Part shown: positions 18,257 to 53,800 of the stretch, in pieces
Position numbering within the stretch: the first letter of the stretch is position 1
Layout: every line of letters starts with the position of its first letter
From: Podarcis erhardii
Taxonomy: Eukaryota
Length of the DNA stretch: 64,000 nucleotides
Assembly (NCBI GenBank): GCA_964252035.1
Contig: OZ176201.1
Strand: one strand, 5' to 3'
Made by a program: the position numbers and the translations under genes
Notes under the pieces: model-generated
Databases searched by the model: none
What the model saw: the letters and a program-made list of their open reading frames with translations, nothing else
What the model was told of the DNA's origin: nothing

Positions 18257-20171
18257 TCTCTCTCCCTGTGTGTGTGTGTGTGTGTGTGTGTGTGCATATA
18301 AACTTTGTGTGGCATGAGGAATTTTGTACAGATTGTTTTCCCCCTTTCTTTTCTTTTTTGCAGTGTCACCAGTTTGGTCCAATATTTCCTGCAAGCCCTG
18401 CAATAAACTTCGTGAGCTATGCTGAAGTCCTCTTTCCATCATATCTACTCCCTGAAGGATCATCACTGCAATTTACAGCACAAAGTTACCATCTCATATG
18501 TATGAAACAAACAACATCTGCTCAAGTCAGCTAAAAGAAAAGAAAAAGCTCAATATACCACTTCTTGAGTCAAAAAGTTCAATTCTAGAGCAATCAAGTC
18601 ACAGATGAATAGGAAACTGAAAGGTGTCTTCAAGAGAGAGATGCTTGTCAGTAAACAAAGCAGCCAAGAATCTGCAATCATACGGGAATCATAAATTTAG
18701 GAAGTCTAGAATCAAAACTCAAGCTAGTGAACTACTATAAATTGTGAGTGTTCAGCTGTCAAGGGCCTTTTCTGGTAGGGATGAGAAGTGGAGTGTGCAA
18801 CACAAACATATGTCATTGACAAGATATTGGGAACTCAAAAACATCCACAATTTCCTGAGAGAATACAGCAGTCTCTCAGCATCATTGGTATTTATGAACA
18901 TATTTTTCGTTCCCTCTAATGCAGAATTCAGGTAGGCAGATGCTGATCAACTTGGGAGGTAAAACAGGGACACCGAGGAACAATACAAAGGTATACAGAA
19001 ATACTTATCTGTAAAATTAGGTCCCAATCCCTCCCCCCAAAATGCTACTTGGTGATTACTCCACATGCTTTGCATAAGGCCCCCAGCACACGGTGGACTG
19101 AACTCAAAACGCTGGCTTGTGTTTGTTGTCCTCTGCAGGTAGTTGAAATCGTGTAAGTCAAATGTGTGTAAATGAGGGATTACTGTATACAGTATATAAT
19201 ATAGTACATTGGGTTACCTCGTGGGAAGCTGTTCATATACGAACTAAATAAAACAACAACCAAAAGCCTGAGTATTGGCCAGCCAAAGAGGGGTGGCTAA
19301 CTCTTTCTGAAATACAAAAATATCAAAGAGACAGCTTTTAGTGGGATGGATACTTAGGCATAACTAAAGAGAGTAAATGCATTAACAAAAGAGACAACAA
19401 AAGTTCCTAATGCATGCTCTGCTGCTATAAAAATGTCAGTATTAGAATTCAGGGTTGGAGCCCTGCTATACTTTCTTTCTTTCCTGTTTTTGATCCTGCG
19501 ATGCTCCGGTGTTTAAAGCACCGCACCCTGCTGCCATGGGAATGGCAGGGATGTCAACAAATTCAGCATTACCATGGCTTTGCTGCAGGATTAAAAGTAG
19601 AAAGAGAAGAGAGGCTGACAAGGAGATGGAATTTGTTTAAGCACACAAAAAAAGCATCTTGGCTAATTCACACTTTAAAAAATGACTGGGAAGCCATGAA
19701 CCATAAATCCATTACATAAGCACCTTCGGATTGATATGTAATAGAGACCCAGCATGAGCATTCAATCTTAAAGCTGCAGGGTTTCACCTCAACAGTCCTC
19801 AGTGATTCTCACCACAAACTCTTCTTCTAAACAAGGATCATGTGAGACACGTTTATAACCTGAGTGTGTATTCTTCTTTTCTTTGCAGAGGGGCAGCTCT
19901 CTCAAACTCTCTTAGTGTAATTTTTTTTTTGGGGGGGGGTAATGGTTGCCTTATTTTTACCCTGTTTTGCAAAGTTTTTGGTGACAAAATGAAGCACAGT
20001 TAGCTTGACATTTGGTAGTTCCGCTTTCCTGTTCCTTTCTGTCATGGTAAATTGGACCCCGATAGCTTAGTAAATTAAACATATTCCTAGGAATTTGAAT
20101 AGGACTGACCCATGATTGTTGAGTACTACACAGAGCACAAAGGGTTCAGGTTTGCTAAATTTGCTTTTCAA

Positions 20172-20220
20172 AATAAAAATTTAAAAAAAATTGTCCAGTA
20201 GCACCCTATAGACCAACTAC
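20172..20220 (-). mobile_element. Older truncated Penelope-like 3' terminus without ribozyme core
   Basis: Reverse complement gtagttggtctatagggtgctactggacaattttttt resembles the terminus at 50848-50880 and shares gtagttggtctat with the copy at 44038-44050. Confidence 0.7.
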
Positions 20221-20230
20221 CGTAATATTT

Positions 20231-20526
20231 AAAACAAAACAAATTCCTTCCAGTAGCACCTTAAAGACCAACTAAGTCAGTTCTTGGTATGAGCTTTCGT
20301 GTGCATGCACACTTCTTCATTCTTCATTCTTCATTCTTCATTCTTCATTCTTCATTCTTCATTCTTCATTCTTCATTTCGTGTGCATGCACACTTCTTGG
20401 TATCTGAAGAAGTGTGCATGCACACGAAAGCTCATACCAAGAACTGACTTAGTTGGTCTTTAAGGTGCTACTGGAAGGAATTTGTTTTGTTTTGACTATG
20501 GCAGACCAACATGGCTACCTATCTGT
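20231..20526. mobile_element. Rearranged Penelope-like terminal insertion: 89-bp perfect inverted repeat around a (TTCTTCA)9 microsatellite
   Basis: Arms 20231-20319 and 20405-20493 are exact reverse complements and nearly identical to 50801-50878; 13-bp TSD TACCGTAATATTT (20218-20230, 20527-20539). Confidence 0.9.
20394..20443 (+). ncRNA. Minimal type I hammerhead ribozyme motif (Penelope-associated) with 10-bp stem I
   Basis: UUCUUGGUAU-CUGAAGA-A-GUGUG(CAUG)CACAC-GAAA-GC-UC^AUACCAAGAA. Core CUGANGA/GAAA/UH present; palindromic AGCU stem III; predicted cleavage after C20433. Confidence 0.75.
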
Positions 20527-20899
20527 TACCGTAATATTTGTTTTTCAAATATATGAAATACTGTAGCTGCTATATTTCGAAGCAGCCCCATTGGAATAGA
20601 GAGTTAAACTGGCCAATTTTATGTACTCCTGATCTGGATTGGAAGTTTGCCCCCAATAGTCCTGTTTGCATGGAACAGAGCCTTTGGGGGGCAAATGGAA
20701 GCTGAGTAGGAGGAAAATGATTTTCAGGAGGAAACTGGCACAGTTCCCGATCTGGATTAGAAACACATTCTTGATCGGGGGCCCTGCAGCTATTTTTTCT
20801 TCAGAATGAGAGCAGCCAATTTAAGCACACTTTTTAAAGCAAGTGTGAATAATGTTAATGTGCAGATTGGCCTCTAGCCTCAGCGGAGCATATTTTGCC

Positions 20900-22453: not shown

Positions 22454-22812
22454 AAGGTAAAGGTACCCCTGCCTGTACGGGCCAGTCTTGACAGACTCTG
22501 GGGTTGGTGCGCCCATCTCACTTAAGAGGCCGGGGGCCAGCGCTGTCCGGAGACACTTCCAGGTCACGTGGCCAGCGTGACAAAGCTGCATCTGGTGAGC
22601 CAGCGCAGCACACGGAAACGCCGTTTACCTTCCCGACGGTAAGCGGTCCCTATTTATCTACTTGCACCCGGGGGTGCTTTCGAACTGCTAGGTTGGCAGG
22701 CGCTGGGACCGAGCAGCGGGAGTGCACCCCGCCGCGGGGATTCGAACCGCCGACCTTCCGATCGGCAAGCCCTAGGCGCTGAGGCTTTTACCCACAGCGC
22801 CACCCGCGTCCC
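22454..22812 (-). mobile_element. Full-length Sauria SINE, divergent young subfamily
   Basis: Minus strand starts GGGACGCGGGTGGCGCTGTGGG with intact B box GGTTCGAATCC and ends in (ACCTTT)n; perfect 15-bp TSD TCCCTCAGTGATATA (22439-22453, 22813-22827); CpGs retained. Confidence 0.93.
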
Positions 22813-23232
22813 TCCCTCAGTGATATAGGGACCAATAATTCTTAATTTAACTCTTGGAGAAGTGGCAGTGTGGTGGGCCCAAGTTGTGAAGCTGCTCTCC
22901 TAACACCAGTGATGCTATAGCTTCCCTGGGCAGGGCTGGAGCAGGCAGGGTGGCAACAACATTGAGACTGTGGCTGTGGCAGGCCGCTGGGTTGCCTGTG
23001 CATTCACAAAGCCCTGACCTGGCTATCGCCTTATCCACCTCAGCCTCACCCAGGCCAGCTGTTCAGAGGTTGGCTCCATGGCTCTGCCCCAACATCCCAT
23101 TCATTATGAGAGGGGGCCTGAGTAGGGATGGGGAAATATCTCCACATATATAGTGGATTGCATTTCTAAAAGGAACCACAACAGTGAAGAAATTCATGGT
23201 CCCAACCCAGTTGGAGGACTAACCCCTTAGAC

Positions 23233-43991: not shown

Positions 43992-44050
43992 ATCTGAAGA
44001 AGTGTGCATGCACACAAAAGCTTATACCAGAACAAACGTAGTTGGTCTAT
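43992..44050 (+). mobile_element. Penelope-like terminus with degenerate hammerhead motif (GAAA changed to AAAA)
   Basis: atCTGAAGAagtgtgcatgcacacAAAAgcttataccagaacaaacgtagttggtctat; runs into the assembly gap. Confidence 0.8.
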
Positions 44051-44058
44051 CTGTCTCT

Positions 44059-44193
44059 NNNNNNNNNNNNNNNNNNNNNNNNNNNNNNNNNNNNNNNNNN
44101 NNNNNNNNNNNNNNNNNNNNNNNNNNNNNNNNNNNNNNNNNNNNNNNNNNNNNNNNNNNNNNNNNNNNNNNNNNNNNNNNNNNNNNNNNNNNN
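44059..44193. other. Assembly gap (135 N)
   Basis: Direct reading. Confidence 1.
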
Positions 44194-49932: not shown

Positions 49933-50615
49933 CCAGAGAGAACTTGCTGCAAGACAGACCCAAAAAAGAAAATAACAGAACACCTCTAGTCATCACATAC
50001 AGCTCCCAAGTTAAAACAGTACAACGCATCATCAGAGATCTACAACCTCTCCTGGACAATGACAGTTCTCTTTCTTAAGCTCTGGGAGGAAGACCTTTCA
50101 TTGCCTACAGACAGCCACCCAATCTTAAACAACTCCTAACCCACAATAATACTACAACCAGACTTAACACGGACACTGGCACCAGAGCCTGCAATAAACC
50201 CAGATGCCAACTTTGCTGCCACATACACCCGGACAACACCATTACTGGCCCCAACAACATCACACATACCATCTCGGGACTATTTAATTGCTCATCGTCT
50301 AACATTGTGTATGCCATCAAATGCCGACAGTGTCCTTCAGCTCTCTATATTGGACAAACAGGCCAAACCTTACGCCAAAGAATAAACGGACATAAATCTG
50401 ACATCAGGAATCACAAGACAGAGAAACCAGTAGGAGAACACTTCAATCTCCCAGGACATTCTATACAAGATCTCAAAGTAGTTGTTCTATTACAAAGGAA
50501 TTTCAGAAATAGACTGGAAAGAGAAGCTGCTGAATTGCAACTTATTACCAAACTTAAAACCATGGAGAGACCTGGTCTGAACAAAGACATTGGATTCTTA
50601 TCTCATTATACATGA
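49933..50615 (+). pseudogene. Penelope ORF C-terminus: RT-EN linker and GIY-YIG endonuclease, one in-frame stop
   Basis: RENLLQDRPKKENNRTPLVITYS...NDSSLS*ALGGRPFIAYRQPPNLKQLL...CNKPRCQLC...FNCSSSNIVYAIKCRQCPSALYIGQTGQTLRQRINGHKSDIRN...VGEHFN...REAAE. Single frame except TAA at 50076-50078. Confidence 0.92.
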
Positions 50616-50795
50616 CATAGCCATTTTTCACCTTCTCACCCCTTGCTTTTTCCTGTAAGACCTACTGCAGTCGTTAAGAGTCGTCAACAGGCTCATCACA
50701 GCTATCTGCCAATCACCCATTCCCACCACCCTTCTGAGTAATACCCCTCCCCACCTTCTCACTATATAGAAGGGTCTGGTGACTTCTGTTTCAGT

Positions 50796-50833
50796 GTATC
50801 TGAAGAAGTGTGCATGCACACGAAAGCTCATAC
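50796..50833 (+). ncRNA. Minimal type I hammerhead ribozyme motif in the Penelope terminus
   Basis: GUAU-CUGAAGA-A-GUGUG(CAUG)CACAC-GAAA-GC-UC^AUAC; 4-bp stem I, palindromic AGCU stem III; predicted cleavage after C50829. Confidence 0.75.
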
Positions 50834-53800
50834 CAAGAACTAACTTAGTTGGTCTTTAAGGTGCTACTGGAAGGAATTTTTTTATTTTGTTTTAATCTCC
50901 TCAAAGGTTTGAGAAAGGAGGCAGATTGGTGAAGATTAATGACGCTAAGACTGTTTTGATGTATGGAAGTGATGTTATATGGAAAATGTCTGGATATGGC
51001 TACTGGATAAAAAAATAATAATATCCACGCAGGATTACAGACTGTTTTAACCAGCTTGTGGAGACTATCAGAGGTCACAAAGAGAAATGAAAAATATATG
51101 AAAATAACAACAAGAGATGTGGAAAAACAATAATAAAGGATTGGATAGTACTGTGAACATCATATGGTTAGATTTGTGGACATTAAAAGAGCAGCAAGAA
51201 GCAAGAAGTTGATTGGATCCCCTTCGGAACTTGAAATATGGGTACCCCCAACAAAAATTTAAAATTCGGCTGTGTAATTTGGAATTTATGTAATTTGGTT
51301 TGATTTGATGTGATTGGTCAGTTAATAAAAAATTATTCTTTTTTAAAAAAACAAAATGCTAACATTCATAAATCCAGTCCCGCTCATCACAAAGATGAAG
51401 CAGATGAACTGTTTGCTAGAGCTATCATTTGTAGAATTCATGAACCCATTACCTCCAGAGTCTAATGAGATGGATGGGTTTAAGAACTGTACCATGCATA
51501 CGTACAATTGTTGATTATGCACATTTCAAAAGTATGACTCTCACTGATCATTTAGTCTGCAAAATGCAGCTTTCTAGTCTTGGTCCAAATTACATATTTA
51601 AAATCCTCTTCCTGGTTATAGGATCCTCTTCTCCTGCCCCCTAAACTTTTTTATTATTTCACTTTATGCCTATCGCACAGCATCCATTCGGTAAGCTTTC
51701 CCATCCATATTTCAGAACAAAGTTCCTTCTTTATTACAAAGTACAAGCAGCCAAGCATCTGTTAGTGCAGTAATATATGTATCACCAGCTAAGCCCAGTT
51801 TACTTAAAATGGAGTGTTTCCAGTTCTTCTTGTGAATAGAGAAATAAATCTCTCTCCCTTTCCCTTCGTTCCCGGGAAAACGGAGCTGAAAGCTCAGTTC
51901 AATTGCCACTGCTTTCAGAATGCCAAGTGAATGATAAAAGGGATGGAATTACACACACGTCCACCCAAAAACGTAAGGGCAGGAATGGGGTAGCAATGAT
52001 TGGAGCAAATTACAGCATAGAGGCTCAGAAAAGGCCTGATGTGGAGGAGATTTCACAGACAACTAGAATCTCCATAAAATAAGGCACTCTCTACAGACCT
52101 TTCAAGCAACTGCCCGCTACAAAGAACAATTCAATCTGATAATGTAACCTGGGGATGAAAGATGCACATGACTCTGGTGCTTCTAGATGAGAGTAGTGTG
52201 GTTTTTAATTGCCCAACCCATTACATTTAATTTGTCTTTTAGAAAGAAGCAAACACAAATAGATTTAATGAGAAGATCAAATGTGGGGTGGGCAGCAAAT
52301 CAAATATTGTGGGAAGATATATTTACAGGTTCCTTCCTGTGTTGATCTTTAAATATTTAATGGGAACAGTGGGACGGGTTTCTGATTCAGAGAACTAGCT
52401 TCAAATTCTGTGTCCTAGTGCTTTACAGGAATCTAATGTCTTGCCTTAACAGCAGCTAAAGCCTAGCCCATACATTATGAAAACGGATCAAACGAGGAAC
52501 AGTGACCAGACTCTGTGCTACTCCCCAAACAGAAGCAATCTGGTGTGCAAACCCTGCTCATCTATTCAACGAGGAGGAATTCAATGTCTCACTCTCGCTT
52601 AGCAGTATACTAGCTGCGCAAGGAAGTCAAAGAGACACAGGATGAATCTCATCACTGCTTGTGCAACAGATTGCTGCTGTAGTCCTGATACTTGTGCAAC
52701 AAGCTTCCACTAGCACAACTGTTGTGCTGCATTACATACTGCACAACTTTTATTTTTGTCCTTATCCTATTGTAACAACCCTTGCACTGGTGGTCAGAGA
52801 AAGTTTAATCCGGGCCAATATTTTCTGCTAAATACCTTTCAAATTTGTTTTTCTTCCCCCTTTACTCTATTCAATCATCTCTACCATCCCCAACTTTCAA
52901 ATTGTACACACATTCACAAGTTAATAATGTAAAAGTGCTCATGTCTGGCTGCACACAAAATTTGCTTACCAAGATTAAAAGGTGAAGGCATTATATGCAC
53001 TGCTGAAGAACATACAGTCCATAGGACTGGAATGACTGCCAGCGGCAATGTGCTCTTTAGATCGACAAGTAGAATGTGAAACAGGCTGTCAGACAAACTG
53101 GGAATACTAAGAAAAATTATCCTTCCCCAGCAGACCTGGGCTGCATTGGCTTGGGAACTATGACGAAAGAGTGCATTTTCGACTAGTGTACCGGAGAAAA
53201 TAAATTTTCACTTTTGAAATCACATGCTGCAAGATAGCAATCATTCAATATATTCCAACTTTAAAAGAAAATTAATCTAGACTGTATGAGTTCTGCCGAA
53301 GGGCATATGCAGAGTCCATTTCAAGGTCAGATTTGATTCATAAAAAATTAATTGGTCAAAGGTAGCATCTGCTGGCCTGATAGCAATGTTATCTTATTGT
53401 GTAGTATTACTAGGGAGTTATCTGCCAGAGTCGCAGGTTAAGCACATATAGGATTTGCGATAGTGACTGAAATGTCTTCCAGTTCTGGTGTAAAAGTGGA
53501 AATGGAAATGAGATGGCATTTATCACAAAATGTAAACCCAGGGATATAGAAATGTGCTGGTATGGGTTCAACCAAGGACACAGCTCATGCTATAATCAAA
53601 GCACAATCCAATGCCAGTCAGTAAAATTGTTACATATTGGCAGGTGCAGCCCTCCCTATCATACAAGAAGGATACGTACCAGGAACAGGGATAAAGTGCC
53701 ACTCTCTGCCATAATTATGCACAGTGTCATGCATGCTTTAACTAACTCATTATAAAACAACTCTTTTCTAAATCGTGGTGAATATCCATTTCTACACACA

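What the first reader, a model, noticed from the sequence alone, without database searches (positions are those of the whole stretch)
20218..20539. Ribozyme cassette: inverted Penelope termini around a microsatellite built from the hammerhead core, with a lengthened stem I
Seen: a 296-bp insertion with a perfect 13-bp TSD. It has two exact 89-bp inverted arms and a spacer of (TTCTTCA)9, a third partial stem-II copy (20376-20398) and ggtatc. On the minus strand the repeat unit is UGAAGAA, which is the catalytic-core bases U4-A9 plus the following A. On the plus strand the junction puts UUCUUGGUAU directly before CUGAAGA, giving a 10-bp stem I versus 4 bp in the native copy at 50796. Established: Penelope-like elements carry minimal type I hammerheads (Cervera and de la Pena 2014). 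Inference: RT slippage and template switching at the ribozyme core generated the microsatellite and a rearranged, possibly more stable ribozyme. Its folding would compete with the 89-bp hairpin, so activity could depend on co-transcriptional folding. I know of no description of microsatellites arising from ribozyme cores, but I have not searched.
Basis: partly seen in the sequence, partly recalled or inferred. Interest (0 to 1): 0.8.

Follow-up and report, generated by a model that had tools for sequence, protein, structure and literature searches.

The report
Fold-back Penelope mini-insertion with heptamer filler
This is a young 296-bp insertion made of two back-to-back copies of the ribozyme-bearing end of a lizard Penelope-like retrotransposon, a known kind of structure; its one odd detail is a 7-base repeat copied from the ribozyme core at the joint, and the "improved ribozyme" there is almost certainly an inert by-product.

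Summary
A perfect 13-bp duplication flanks a 296-bp insert (20231-20526). It has two exact 89-nt inverted arms, (TTCTTCA)9.3, a third 23-nt partial copy and one complete minimal hammerhead (core 20404-20433).

[quoted passage not shown] The sense arm runs 33 nt further out than the inverted arm, which matches the one-sided 30-40 bp PLE "tail". Published anole PLE protein extends both target strands from two internal start sites that far apart.

Every base but one is templated by a single 127-nt unit. The centre reads as a chain of short-homology template switches between two same-sense cDNAs, near the predicted RNA 5' end.

Contigs of the source species enter the insert on both sides. Contigs of related species stop matching at the duplication and fit an empty site in at least one species, so the insertion is young.

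The 10-bp stem I is real. However, a 23-bp hairpin just 5' of the core outcompetes the ribozyme fold (-40.6 vs -17.3 kcal/mol), and minimal PLE hammerheads are inactive as monomers.

How the heptamer array arose is unresolved. This scan has already noted several Penelope fold-backs elsewhere in this genome.

The parts
20218..20230 (.). Left copy of the 13-bp target-site duplication (TACCGTAATATTT)
   Evidence: Exact direct repeat with 20527-20539 (D5), directly abutting both ends of the insert. The source-species contig runs from the flank through it and 23 nt into the arm (record 1).
20231..20319 (-). Inverted arm: antisense copy of unit positions 20493 down to 20405. It starts at the short (tail-less) 3' terminus of the family and ends at U4 of the hammerhead core, so it lacks C3.
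   Evidence: 89-nt exact match. Its outer end coincides with the end of the copy at 50796-50889 and with a recurrent contig boundary at 20494 in four species (table 7).
20313..20377 (-). Heptamer array (TTCTTCA) x9.3, which is (UGAAGAA)n on the minus strand. The first unit is the arm's own core copy, and eight further copies follow.
   Evidence: TRF: period 7, 100% matches. Each unit parses as an antisense copy of 20411 down to 20405. The array is unique in the window.
20376..20398 (-). Third partial copy: antisense of 20429 down to 20407 (GAAA, stem II, AAGAA). It is joined to the array through a shared TT.
   Evidence: 23 nt, 100% complementary to 20407-20429 (I3). With the sense core it forms a -40.6 kcal/mol hairpin.
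20394..20403 (-). 10-nt stretch that can also be read as an antisense copy of 20443 down to 20434 (the 3' strand of stem I plus AAGAA). It overlaps the third copy by 5 nt and the sense arm by 4 nt, and it supplies the 5' strand of the 10-bp stem I.
   Evidence: Exact 10-nt match. Only G20399 is not already explained by its neighbours, so this reading is weakly supported (chance about 1 in 4).
20400..20526 (+). Sense arm: a 127-nt unit that starts just upstream of the hammerhead and runs to the long 3' terminus of the family.
   Evidence: 97% identical to 50796-50889 over the shared part. The canonical upstream sequence ends ...CAGT before G20400. The recurrent contig boundary at 20526 is followed by AT-rich, variable sequence in four species (table 7).
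20404..20433 (+). The only complete minimal type I hammerhead core: C3-A9 CUGAAGA, an unpaired A, stem II GUGUG-CAUG-CACAC, GAAA, the palindromic pair GC, then U16.1 and C17. The predicted cut is after C20433.
   Evidence: Read directly from the sequence. The traits match the min-HHR description in PMC4209133. No Rfam hammerhead hit.
20494..20526 (+). 33-nt 'tail', present at the right end only. It is the stretch between the family's two recurrent 3' termini.
   Evidence: It is absent from the inverted arm and from the copy at 50796. Boundaries at 20494 and 20526 recur in all four runs. PLE tails of 30-40 bp at one end are described in PMC8557442 and explained by two RT start sites in PMC11167929.
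20527..20539 (.). Right copy of the 13-bp target-site duplication
   Evidence: D5. In three related species the right-flank contigs begin to match at 20527-20532 and carry 33-43 further letters that are unlike the tail (records 16, 24, 32).
20169..20219 (-). Older, diverged, 5'-truncated inverted fragment of the same family. The new insertion landed at its inner edge.
   Evidence: About 85% identity to the arm; 73% inverted match to 20450-20500 (I2); alignment. It is present in the related species D up to 20219 (record 25), so it predates the insertion.
50796..50889 (+). Reference ('native') copy of the hammerhead terminus, short form. It continues upstream into the untranslated region and ORF end of a PLE.
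   Evidence: A GIY-YIG ORF lies at 50307-50615 (Pfam PF01541, E = 1.4e-5). TATATA at 50763-50768 and TCAGTG at 50791-50796 lie upstream.
43992..44048 (+). Third family copy in the window. Its 5' end corresponds to unit position 20402, directly after an A-run, and an assembly gap cuts it at 44059.
   Evidence: It has G12 changed to A (CACACAAAA), so its core is mutated.

Best explanation
The cassette is a lineage-specific fold-back mini-insertion of a Penelope-like element (PLE), made in one integration event.

Shown: the structure, the parse of every segment, the recurrent termini and the fold energies.

Inferred:
1. The element's GIY-YIG endonuclease made staggered nicks 13 bp apart in AT-rich DNA, at the edge of an older copy.
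2. Both freed 3' ends primed reverse transcription of the same short RNA region. The bottom strand started at the distal internal start site and gave the sense arm with its 33-nt tail. The top strand started at the proximal site and gave the inverted arm without a tail.
3. Both cDNAs ran to within a few bases of the RNA's 5' end. A TATA box about 30 nt upstream in the reference copy predicts a transcript start just upstream of the hammerhead.
4. Two cDNAs of the same sense can pair only where the RNA is self-complementary. The joint therefore formed in the hammerhead region, by short-homology switches of TT, TTCTT and GTAT (the GTAT/ATAC pairing is stem I itself).
5. These switches re-copied a 23-nt piece of the core and reiterated the 7 nt between stem II and stem I eight more times. 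The reiteration most likely happened during integration, done either by the element's RT or by a host end-joining polymerase.

The lengthened stem I is a by-product of this joining. The ribozyme is not expected to act.
For: Structure and parse:
- Exact duplication, exact arms, array and third copy.
- Every base of 20231-20526 except G20399 is an exact sense or antisense copy of one 127-nt unit.

PLE identity:
- The same hammerhead lies about 180 nt downstream of a GIY-YIG ORF.
- The min-HHR traits are all present.

Tail and two-sided priming:
- The 33-nt asymmetry equals the distance between the two recurrent 3' boundaries, 20494 and 20526. In four species these are followed by AT-rich, variable flanks (table 7).
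- The copy at 50796 ends at the short site.
- PMC8557442 describes an inverted 5'-truncated copy plus a 30-40 bp tail at one end as typical of PLEs.
- PMC11167929 shows an anole PLE protein cleaving and extending both strands. Reverse transcription starts at two internal sites whose spacing is the tail, 82-89 nt beyond the hammerhead cut and 30-40 nt before that. Here the distances are 93 and 60 nt.

5' ends:
- In this window they fall at unit positions 20400, 20405 and 20402.
- Many contigs begin to match at 20397-20400 after AT-rich sequence, and most of the best-supported joints enter at 20400/20401 (tables 5 and 7).
- TATATA lies 30-33 nt upstream of that point in the reference copy.

Youth and insertion:
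- The source-species flank contigs enter the insert by 23 and 29 nt.
- In species D the left contig ends at 20219 and the right contig carries 33 extra letters. Under an empty site that is exactly a 30-nt (k-1) overlap (table 8).
Against: - No read or contig listed spans the centre. The third copy and the heptamer count rest on the assembly alone.
- The empty site in relatives is inferred from contig ends, not read directly. For species B the overlap arithmetic does not fit (7 nt, not 30).
- The published two-strand extension is from a different PLE family (Poseidon_Ac) and was observed in vitro. Joined fold-back products were not shown there.
- No simple realignment on the canonical template gives a 7-nt period. 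The homology available favours 3-nt or 8-nt steps, so the reiteration mechanism is not explained.
- The transcript start is predicted from a TATA box and initiator-like motifs only.
- Part of the clustering of contig boundaries at 20400 is forced, because this copy diverges from the canonical sequence at 20399.
Confidence: 0.72

Rival explanations
1. One reading: the rearrangement created a more stable hammerhead, with a 10-bp stem I, that self-cleaves after C20433, perhaps only during transcription.
For: The core is complete and stem I is 10 bp. Folded alone, 20394-20443 adopts the hammerhead stems at -17.2 kcal/mol, against -6.8 for the native copy, whose minimum-energy fold is not the hammerhead.
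Against: - With its 5' neighbour 20376-20398 a 23-bp hairpin wins, -40.6 against -17.3 kcal/mol, and the hammerhead fold has a probability of about 1.6e-17.
- The whole transcript folds at -170 kcal/mol, against -132 when the hammerhead is forced.
- The competitor is transcribed before the core, so co-transcriptional folding favours the hairpin.
- Single min-HHR motifs gave no detectable cleavage. Helix III, not helix I, is limiting.
- The anole PLE hammerhead needed its protein and was dispensable for insertion.
- There is no second intact core to form a dimer, because the minus-strand copy lacks C3.
Confidence: 0.04
2. The insertion carried only one or two heptamer units at the joint. The nine-unit array grew afterwards by ordinary replication slippage in a GAA/TTC-rich tract at the tip of a hairpin-forming palindrome.
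For: - Microsatellites normally grow this way.
- No clean realignment register explains a 7-nt step on the canonical template (my analysis).
- GAA-rich tracts and palindrome centres are known to be unstable (established knowledge).
Against: - The array is perfectly homogeneous.
- The insertion is young: the arms show 0 differences in 89 nt, the duplication is perfect, and the insert appears absent from relatives that differ by only about 1-2% in the flanks.
- Heptamers with one or two units rarely expand (established knowledge).
Confidence: 0.22
3. One cDNA only: after reaching the palindromic stem II, its 3' end snapped back on itself and self-primed. That produced the inverted arm without a second priming event on the target.
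For: Stem II is a perfect 14-nt palindrome, an ideal snap-back site. The third copy forms a 23-bp hairpin with the core (I3).
Against: - A snap-back copy should mirror the first cDNA out to its very start, tail included. Instead the inverted arm stops exactly at the family's other canonical 3' terminus.
- The joint is not centred on the palindrome.
Confidence: 0.1
4. The whole 296-bp unit is a copy of a pre-existing fold-back master, retrotransposed or duplicated as a unit. In that case the centre was not made at this site.
For: This scan noted several Penelope fold-backs and palindromes elsewhere in the same genome. Contigs of all four species show many rearranged joints around the core (tables 5 and 5c).
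Against: A read-through transcript of a master would not be expected to start exactly at the short canonical terminus. The heptamer array was met nowhere else in the window or in the scan's notes, though these are weak negatives.
Confidence: 0.08
5. Assembly artefact: the inversion or the array was created by the assembler or by chimeric long reads.
For: PLE tandem and inverted structures are known to trouble assemblies. No listed contig spans the centre.
Against: - Independent de Bruijn contigs of the source sample reproduce both outer junctions, 23 and 29 nt into the arms (records 1 and 8).
- The structure carries a perfect duplication and the canonical tail asymmetry, which an artefact would not produce.
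Confidence: 0.04

Closest known systems
PLE complex insertions: an inverted 5'-truncated copy plus a one-sided 30-40 bp tail (Arkhipova 2006; Craig et al. 2021, PMC8557442; Frangieh et al. 2024, PMC11167929)
   Same: Inverted duplicate of the element's terminal region, a hammerhead in the repeated part, a 33-nt extension at one end only, an AT-rich target containing ATT, and a flanking duplication.
   Different: - This is a miniature. There is no ORF and no upstream pseudo-LTR, only two copies of about 90-127 nt joined head to head.
- The family differs from Poseidon_Ac: its stem II is GUGUGCAUGCACAC.
- The joint carries templated filler, including a heptamer array.
Minimal type I hammerheads of metazoan PLEs (Cervera and de la Pena 2014, PMC4209133)
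   Same: The CUGANGA...GAAA core, an unpaired base between positions 9 and 10.1, the G10.1-C11.1 pair, palindromic 15.2-16.2 (GC) that implies a dimeric helix III, and a 4-bp helix I in the native copy.
   Different: Helix I is 10 bp in the cassette. The core is buried in 23-bp and 89-bp hairpins, and no partner motif is available.
L1 twin priming (5' inversions of LINE-1; Ostertag and Kazazian 2001, from memory)
   Same: The second target-strand 3' end also primes reverse transcription, so part of the insert is inverted within one duplication.
   Different: In twin priming the two segments are different parts of one RNA. Here both arms are the same segment, each started at a specific internal RT start site.
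Microsatellite seeding and template slippage at LINE 3' tails (squamate CR1-L3 and Rex, PMC6050309; UnaL2 slippage, from memory)
   Same: A retroelement-linked birth of a short tandem repeat whose unit comes from the element's own sequence.
   Different: In those cases the repeats sit at the 3' end, where reverse transcription begins, and are inherited by daughter copies. Here the array sits at the inner joint, where both cDNAs end, and it is known from this one locus only.
Non-LTR retrozymes (Cervera and de la Pena 2020, PMC7229834; Li et al. 2026 preprint, doi 10.64898/2026.07.22.740005)
   Same: Short non-coding derivatives of the hammerhead-bearing PLE region.
   Different: Retrozymes are direct tandem units with a hammerhead in each, able to release circles. 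This cassette is inverted and has a single intact core.
Templated insertions at polymerase-theta end-joining junctions (established knowledge, from memory)
   Same: Two 3' single-stranded tails are joined through 2-5 nt homologies, with filler copied from nearby sequence in repeated rounds.
   Different: There the substrates are resected chromosome breaks. Whether a host polymerase or the PLE RT made this filler is unknown.

Membership tests
Penelope-like element insertion (EN+ Penelope/Poseidon type) | [quoted passage not shown] | tested here: inconclusive
   The cassette has no ORF. The same hammerhead terminus at 50796 lies about 180 nt downstream of an ORF matching Pfam GIY-YIG (E = 1.4e-5, above the curated cut-off). 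An RT domain was not looked for.
Penelope-like element insertion (EN+ Penelope/Poseidon type) | Hammerhead motif in the repeated terminal region | tested here: met
   Complete core at 20404-20433, with the same motif at 50800-50829.
Penelope-like element insertion (EN+ Penelope/Poseidon type) | Inverted 5'-truncated copy adjacent to the sense copy | tested here: met
   Exact 89-nt inverted arms; the feature is described in PMC8557442.
Penelope-like element insertion (EN+ Penelope/Poseidon type) | 30-40 bp tail at one end only, bounded by two canonical termini | tested here: met
   The 33-nt stretch 20494-20526 is present at the right end only. Both boundaries recur in contigs of four species and in the copy at 50889.
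Penelope-like element insertion (EN+ Penelope/Poseidon type) | Target-site duplication in AT-rich DNA, with absence from the orthologous site of relatives | tested here: inconclusive
   The 13-bp perfect duplication contains ATT. The empty site is inferred from contig ends: exact k-1 overlap in species D, approximate in F, unclear in B. The empty allele itself was not read.
Minimal type I hammerhead (min-HHR) | Conserved core C3-A9, G12-A14 and H17, with an unpaired base between 9 and 10.1 and the G10.1-C11.1 pair | tested here: met
   CUGAAGA, A, GUGUG...CACAC, GAAA, GC, UC, read and compared.
Minimal type I hammerhead (min-HHR) | Self-cleavage (as a dimer) | not testable with these tools
   This needs a bench assay. 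Folding predicts that the active fold is not populated in context.
Minimal type I hammerhead (min-HHR) | Match to the curated Rfam hammerhead models | tested here: not met
   No hammerhead family at the gathering score over the whole window, and none at E up to 10 over 20150-20600. A helix III of a single A-U pair closing a 2-nt GC loop probably lies outside those models (inference).
Non-LTR retrozyme | Two or more hammerheads in direct tandem on one strand | tested here: not met
   There is one complete core on the plus strand. The minus-strand copy starts at U4 and lacks C3, and the third copy lacks CUG.
Retroelement 3'-tail microsatellite (seeding or RT initiation slippage) | Array at the 3' end of the element, where reverse transcription starts | tested here: not met
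   The array lies between the inner (5') ends of the two arms. Both 3' termini are repeat-free.
L1-type twin-priming inversion | The inverted and direct segments are different, contiguous parts of one RNA | tested here: not met
   Both arms copy the same 89 nt.

The most novel reading that the evidence does not exclude
The reverse transcriptases of Penelope-like elements are the closest relatives of telomerase RT. On this reading, the RT stalled a few bases from the 5' end of its RNA and copied the same 7-nt template (UGAAGAA of the hammerhead core) nine times by telomerase-like realignment. This locus would then be a natural footprint of repeat-addition activity in a retrotransposon RT, and a new route by which microsatellites are born at the inner joints of fold-back insertions.
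Probability: 0.12. Interest if true: 0.65.

Novelty: new member of a known kind. Interest (0 to 1): 0.3.

Why it matters
The main value of the locus is as a clean natural example. Its perfect duplication, exact arms and probable empty site in relatives match what the 2024 in vitro work on an anole PLE predicts: both target strands primed, from two internal start sites one tail-length apart.

It also suggests two testable rules. First, mini-insertions may be run-off cDNAs reaching the 5' end of a transcript that starts just upstream of the hammerhead. Second, two same-sense cDNAs may be joined at the ribozyme's own helices.

The heptamer array is a curiosity. It would matter only if it recurs at other joints, which would point to reiterative copying by a telomerase-related RT. 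The "improved ribozyme" should not be followed up as a functional element.

Tried and rejected
- Rfam, at gathering and permissive thresholds, gave no hammerhead hit. The only hits were microRNA-precursor models, which respond to any long hairpin. They were rejected as artefacts of the inverted repeat.
- Searches of the scan's notes for the heptamer or for a hammerhead-linked microsatellite found nothing. The operators state that such blanks mean little.
- The first attempt to find sequencing runs failed because the server was busy; the repeat worked.
- The Logan contigs break inside the repeat, so the centre could not be verified and the empty allele could not be read directly.
- A literature search on PLEs with template switching and microhomology returned nothing relevant.
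- I tried to derive the 7-nt period from a realignment register on the canonical RNA or cDNA. The available homology gives 3-nt (GAA) or 8-nt steps, not 7, so no specific slippage register is proposed.
- ORFs of 130 aa or more across the window gave no Pfam hits, so no gene context or transcription direction could be assigned. The bacterial-type promoter and terminator scan is irrelevant for a vertebrate.
- I considered a MITE or foldback DNA transposon. I rejected it because the arms are the terminus of a retroelement and the ends are asymmetric by the canonical tail.
Full report
**1. What is there**

- TACCGTAATATTT occurs at 20218-20230 and again at 20527-20539, bracketing a 296-bp insert (20231-20526).
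- Positions 20231-20319 and 20405-20493 are an exact 89-nt inverted pair.
- Between them lie (TTCTTCA) x9.3 (20313-20377, 100% matches) and a 23-nt stretch (20376-20398) that is perfectly complementary to 20407-20429.
- The heptamer array is the only period-7 array in the window, and its 14-mer occurs nowhere else in the 64 kb.

I parsed the insert against a single 127-nt sense unit (20400-20526). Every base except G20399 is an exact sense or antisense copy of that unit:

| Insert positions | Orientation | Unit positions copied |
|---|---|---|
| 20231-20319 | antisense | 20493 down to 20405 (89 nt) |
| 20320-20375 | antisense | 20411 down to 20405, eight further copies (the heptamer) |
| 20376-20398 | antisense | 20429 down to 20407 (23 nt) |
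| 20400-20526 | sense | 20400-20526 |

Alternatively, 20394-20403 is an antisense copy of 20443 down to 20434. This stretch overlaps its neighbours by 5 nt (TTCTT) and 4 nt (GTAT), and on that reading nothing is untemplated.

**2. What the arms are**

The motif at 20404-20433 has these parts:
- CUGAAGA (C3-A9) followed by an unpaired A
- stem II GUGUG-CAUG-CACAC
- GAAA, the palindromic pair GC, then U16.1 and C17

These are the traits that Cervera and de la Pena list for the minimal hammerheads of metazoan Penelope-like elements. They also describe a 4-5 bp helix I and a helix III that exists only in a dimer (PMC4209133).

Two other copies of the same sequence lie in the window, at 50796 and 43992. 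The copy at 50796 continues upstream into an ORF (50307-50615) that matches Pfam GIY-YIG above the curated threshold. That ties the family to a PLE.

Rfam's hammerhead models do not score the motif. The microRNA-precursor hits only reflect the hairpin.

Read depth shows the family is enormously multi-copy in four related species.

**3.

The sense arm continues 33 nt beyond the inverted repeat, to 20526.
- The inverted arm ends at unit position 20493, where the copy at 50796 also ends.
- In the contigs of all four runs, matches break off recurrently at 20494 and at 20526. AT-rich, variable sequence follows, as expected for insertion flanks (table 7).

So the family has two canonical 3' termini 33 nt apart. 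This cassette uses one at each end.

This is the PLE "tail". Craig et al. describe an inverted 5'-truncated copy adjacent to the element and a 30-40 bp extension often present at one end only (PMC8557442). Frangieh et al. worked with purified protein of an anole PLE (PMC11167929) and showed three relevant things:
- The protein cleaves and extends both target strands.
- Reverse transcription starts at two internal RNA sites whose spacing is the tail.
- Cleavage prefers AT-rich DNA with ATT.

In their element the hammerhead cut is after nt 29, and the main start site is at 111-118 (sequence). That is 82-89 nt beyond the cut, with the other site 30-40 nt before it. Here the two termini lie 93 and 60 nt beyond the predicted cut.

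The geometry of the duplication fits two inward-facing 3' ends. The top-strand end after 20230 begins the tail-less antisense copy. The bottom-strand end before 20527 begins the tailed copy.

**4. Is it an insertion, and how old is it**

In the run that best holds the stretch (organism A, possibly the assembled sample), the unique flank contigs run 23 nt and 29 nt into the insert (records 1 and 8).

In organisms B, D and F no flank contig enters the arms. The right-flank contigs start to match at 20527-20532 and carry 33-43 further letters that are unlike the tail.
- Organism D: the left contig ends at 20219. Under an empty site, the right contig's 33 extra letters correspond to 20190-20222. 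That is an exact 30-nt overlap, as expected for neighbouring contigs built with 31-letter words.
- Organism F: the overlap is about 25 nt plus indels.
- Organism B: the arithmetic does not fit.

This is an inference from contig ends, not a read-out of the empty allele. It agrees with the perfect duplication and the identical arms. The insertion is most likely specific to the lineage of organism A.

The older, roughly 85%-similar inverted fragment at 20169-20219 is present in D, so it predates the insertion. The new copy landed within 2 nt of its inner edge.

**5. Why the joint sits at the ribozyme (inference)**

Two cDNAs copied from the same RNA have the same sense. They can pair only where the RNA is self-complementary, which here means stem I (GTAT/ATAC) and the 14-nt palindromic stem II.

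Both arms also end within a few bases of each other, at unit positions 20400 and 20405. The copy at 43992 starts at position 20402 after an A-run.
- Many contigs start to match at 20397-20400 after AT-rich sequence.
- Most of the best-supported joints enter at 20400/20401 (tables 5 and 7).
- Part of this clustering is forced, because this copy departs from the canonical ...CAGT at 20399.

In the reference copy, TATATA (50763-50768) lies 30-33 nt upstream of that point, and TCAGTG spans it.

I therefore propose that the arms are run-off cDNAs. They reach almost to the 5' end of a transcript that starts just upstream of the hammerhead. The centre is the product of joining their 3' ends through homologies of 2, 5 and 4 nt, with filler re-copied from the core.

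Contigs of the relatives show many other rearranged joints in this area, including "go-back" joints that imply short tandem units (table 5c). The region is therefore a general hot spot for joints.

**6. The heptamer**

The unit is the 7 nt between stem II and stem I (U4-A9 plus the unpaired A), in phase with the arm's own copy. Its origin is unresolved.
- I could not find a realignment register on the canonical template that yields a 7-nt step. The GAA homology gives 3-nt steps and the UG homology gives 8-nt steps.
- The array's perfect homogeneity and the youth of the insertion favour birth during integration, by reiterated annealing and extension of two complementary short 3' tails.
- Later slippage from a shorter seed is not excluded, nor is inheritance from a master copy.
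- The array is known from this locus only. The reads tool was exhausted before I could look for it elsewhere.

**7. The ribozyme claim**

Stem I is indeed 10 bp. Four of the pairs are the native stem. Five arise because AAGAA occurs both in the core and after AUACC. One is G20399.

| RNA folded | Hammerhead fold (kcal/mol) | Competing fold (kcal/mol) |
|---|---|---|
| 20394-20443 alone | -17.2 | - |
| Native copy alone | -6.8 | its minimum-energy fold is not the hammerhead |
| 20376-20443 (adds the 5' neighbour) | -17.3 | -40.6 (23-bp hairpin) |
| Whole plus-strand RNA | -132 (hammerhead forced) | -170 |

- With the 5' neighbour present, the hammerhead fold has an ensemble probability of about 1.6e-17.
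- The competitor is transcribed first, so co-transcriptional folding does not help.
- Single minimal hammerheads showed no detectable cleavage.
- The anole PLE ribozyme needed its protein and was dispensable for insertion.
- The minus-strand copy lacks C3, so the cassette offers no dimer partner.

The rearranged ribozyme is best regarded as an inert by-product.

**8. Comparison and verdict**

The structure is a new example of a described kind: a PLE complex inverted insertion with a tail and a minimal hammerhead. This scan had already noted several Penelope fold-backs and palindromes elsewhere in the same genome. I did not check those.

It is not any of the following:
- a retrozyme, because it has no tandem hammerheads
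- an L1-type twin-priming inversion, because both arms are the same segment
- a case of 3'-tail microsatellite seeding as in squamate LINEs (PMC6050309), because the array lies at the inner joint

The unusual residue is the heptamer array derived from the ribozyme core. Interest is modest unless a census shows that it recurs.

No gene context was found.

Noticed in passing
window 20169-20219: An older, roughly 85%-similar, 5'-truncated inverted fragment of the same PLE family ends 2 nt inside the new insertion's target duplication. The young copy therefore landed at the edge of an old one. This could be homing to the element's own AT-rich sequence, as suggested for the anole element in PMC11167929, or it could be chance.
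   Followed up: partly
window 50763-50796: In the copy that continues into the GIY-YIG ORF, a TATATA box lies 30-33 nt upstream of the first base of the hammerhead unit, and a TCAGTG initiator-like motif spans that point. This predicts a transcript start just 5' of the ribozyme. That would make the abundant mini-copies of about 95-130 nt run-off cDNAs rather than random 5' truncations.
   Followed up: partly
window 43992-44058: Another copy of the hammerhead terminus starts directly after a 14-nt A-run at unit position 20402. It has G12 mutated to A (CACACAAAA), and the 135-N assembly gap at 44059-44193 cuts it off.
   Followed up: no
window 20400-20490 (contigs of organism D, table 5c): Contigs of a related species contain 'go-back' joints, for example 20488 back to 20408 with 4 letters between (summed depth about 1070) and 20437 back to 20403. 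These imply abundant short direct tandem units of the hammerhead region, of about 40-85 nt, which resemble retrozyme-like arrays.
   Followed up: no
window 20446: Most family copies in all four species read A where this cassette has G (about 55-90% of summed depth), as does the copy at 50796. Both arms of the cassette share the G, so both came from the same minority source variant.
   Followed up: partly
window 22500-23000: A 500-bp stretch of 61% G+C lies about 2 kb downstream of the cassette, in surroundings of otherwise about 40% G+C. It may be a CpG island or an exon.
   Followed up: no
window 19870-19977: A short stretch in the left flank has 4- to 30-fold higher summed contig depth than its surroundings in all four runs. 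It is probably another, moderately repeated element.
   Followed up: no
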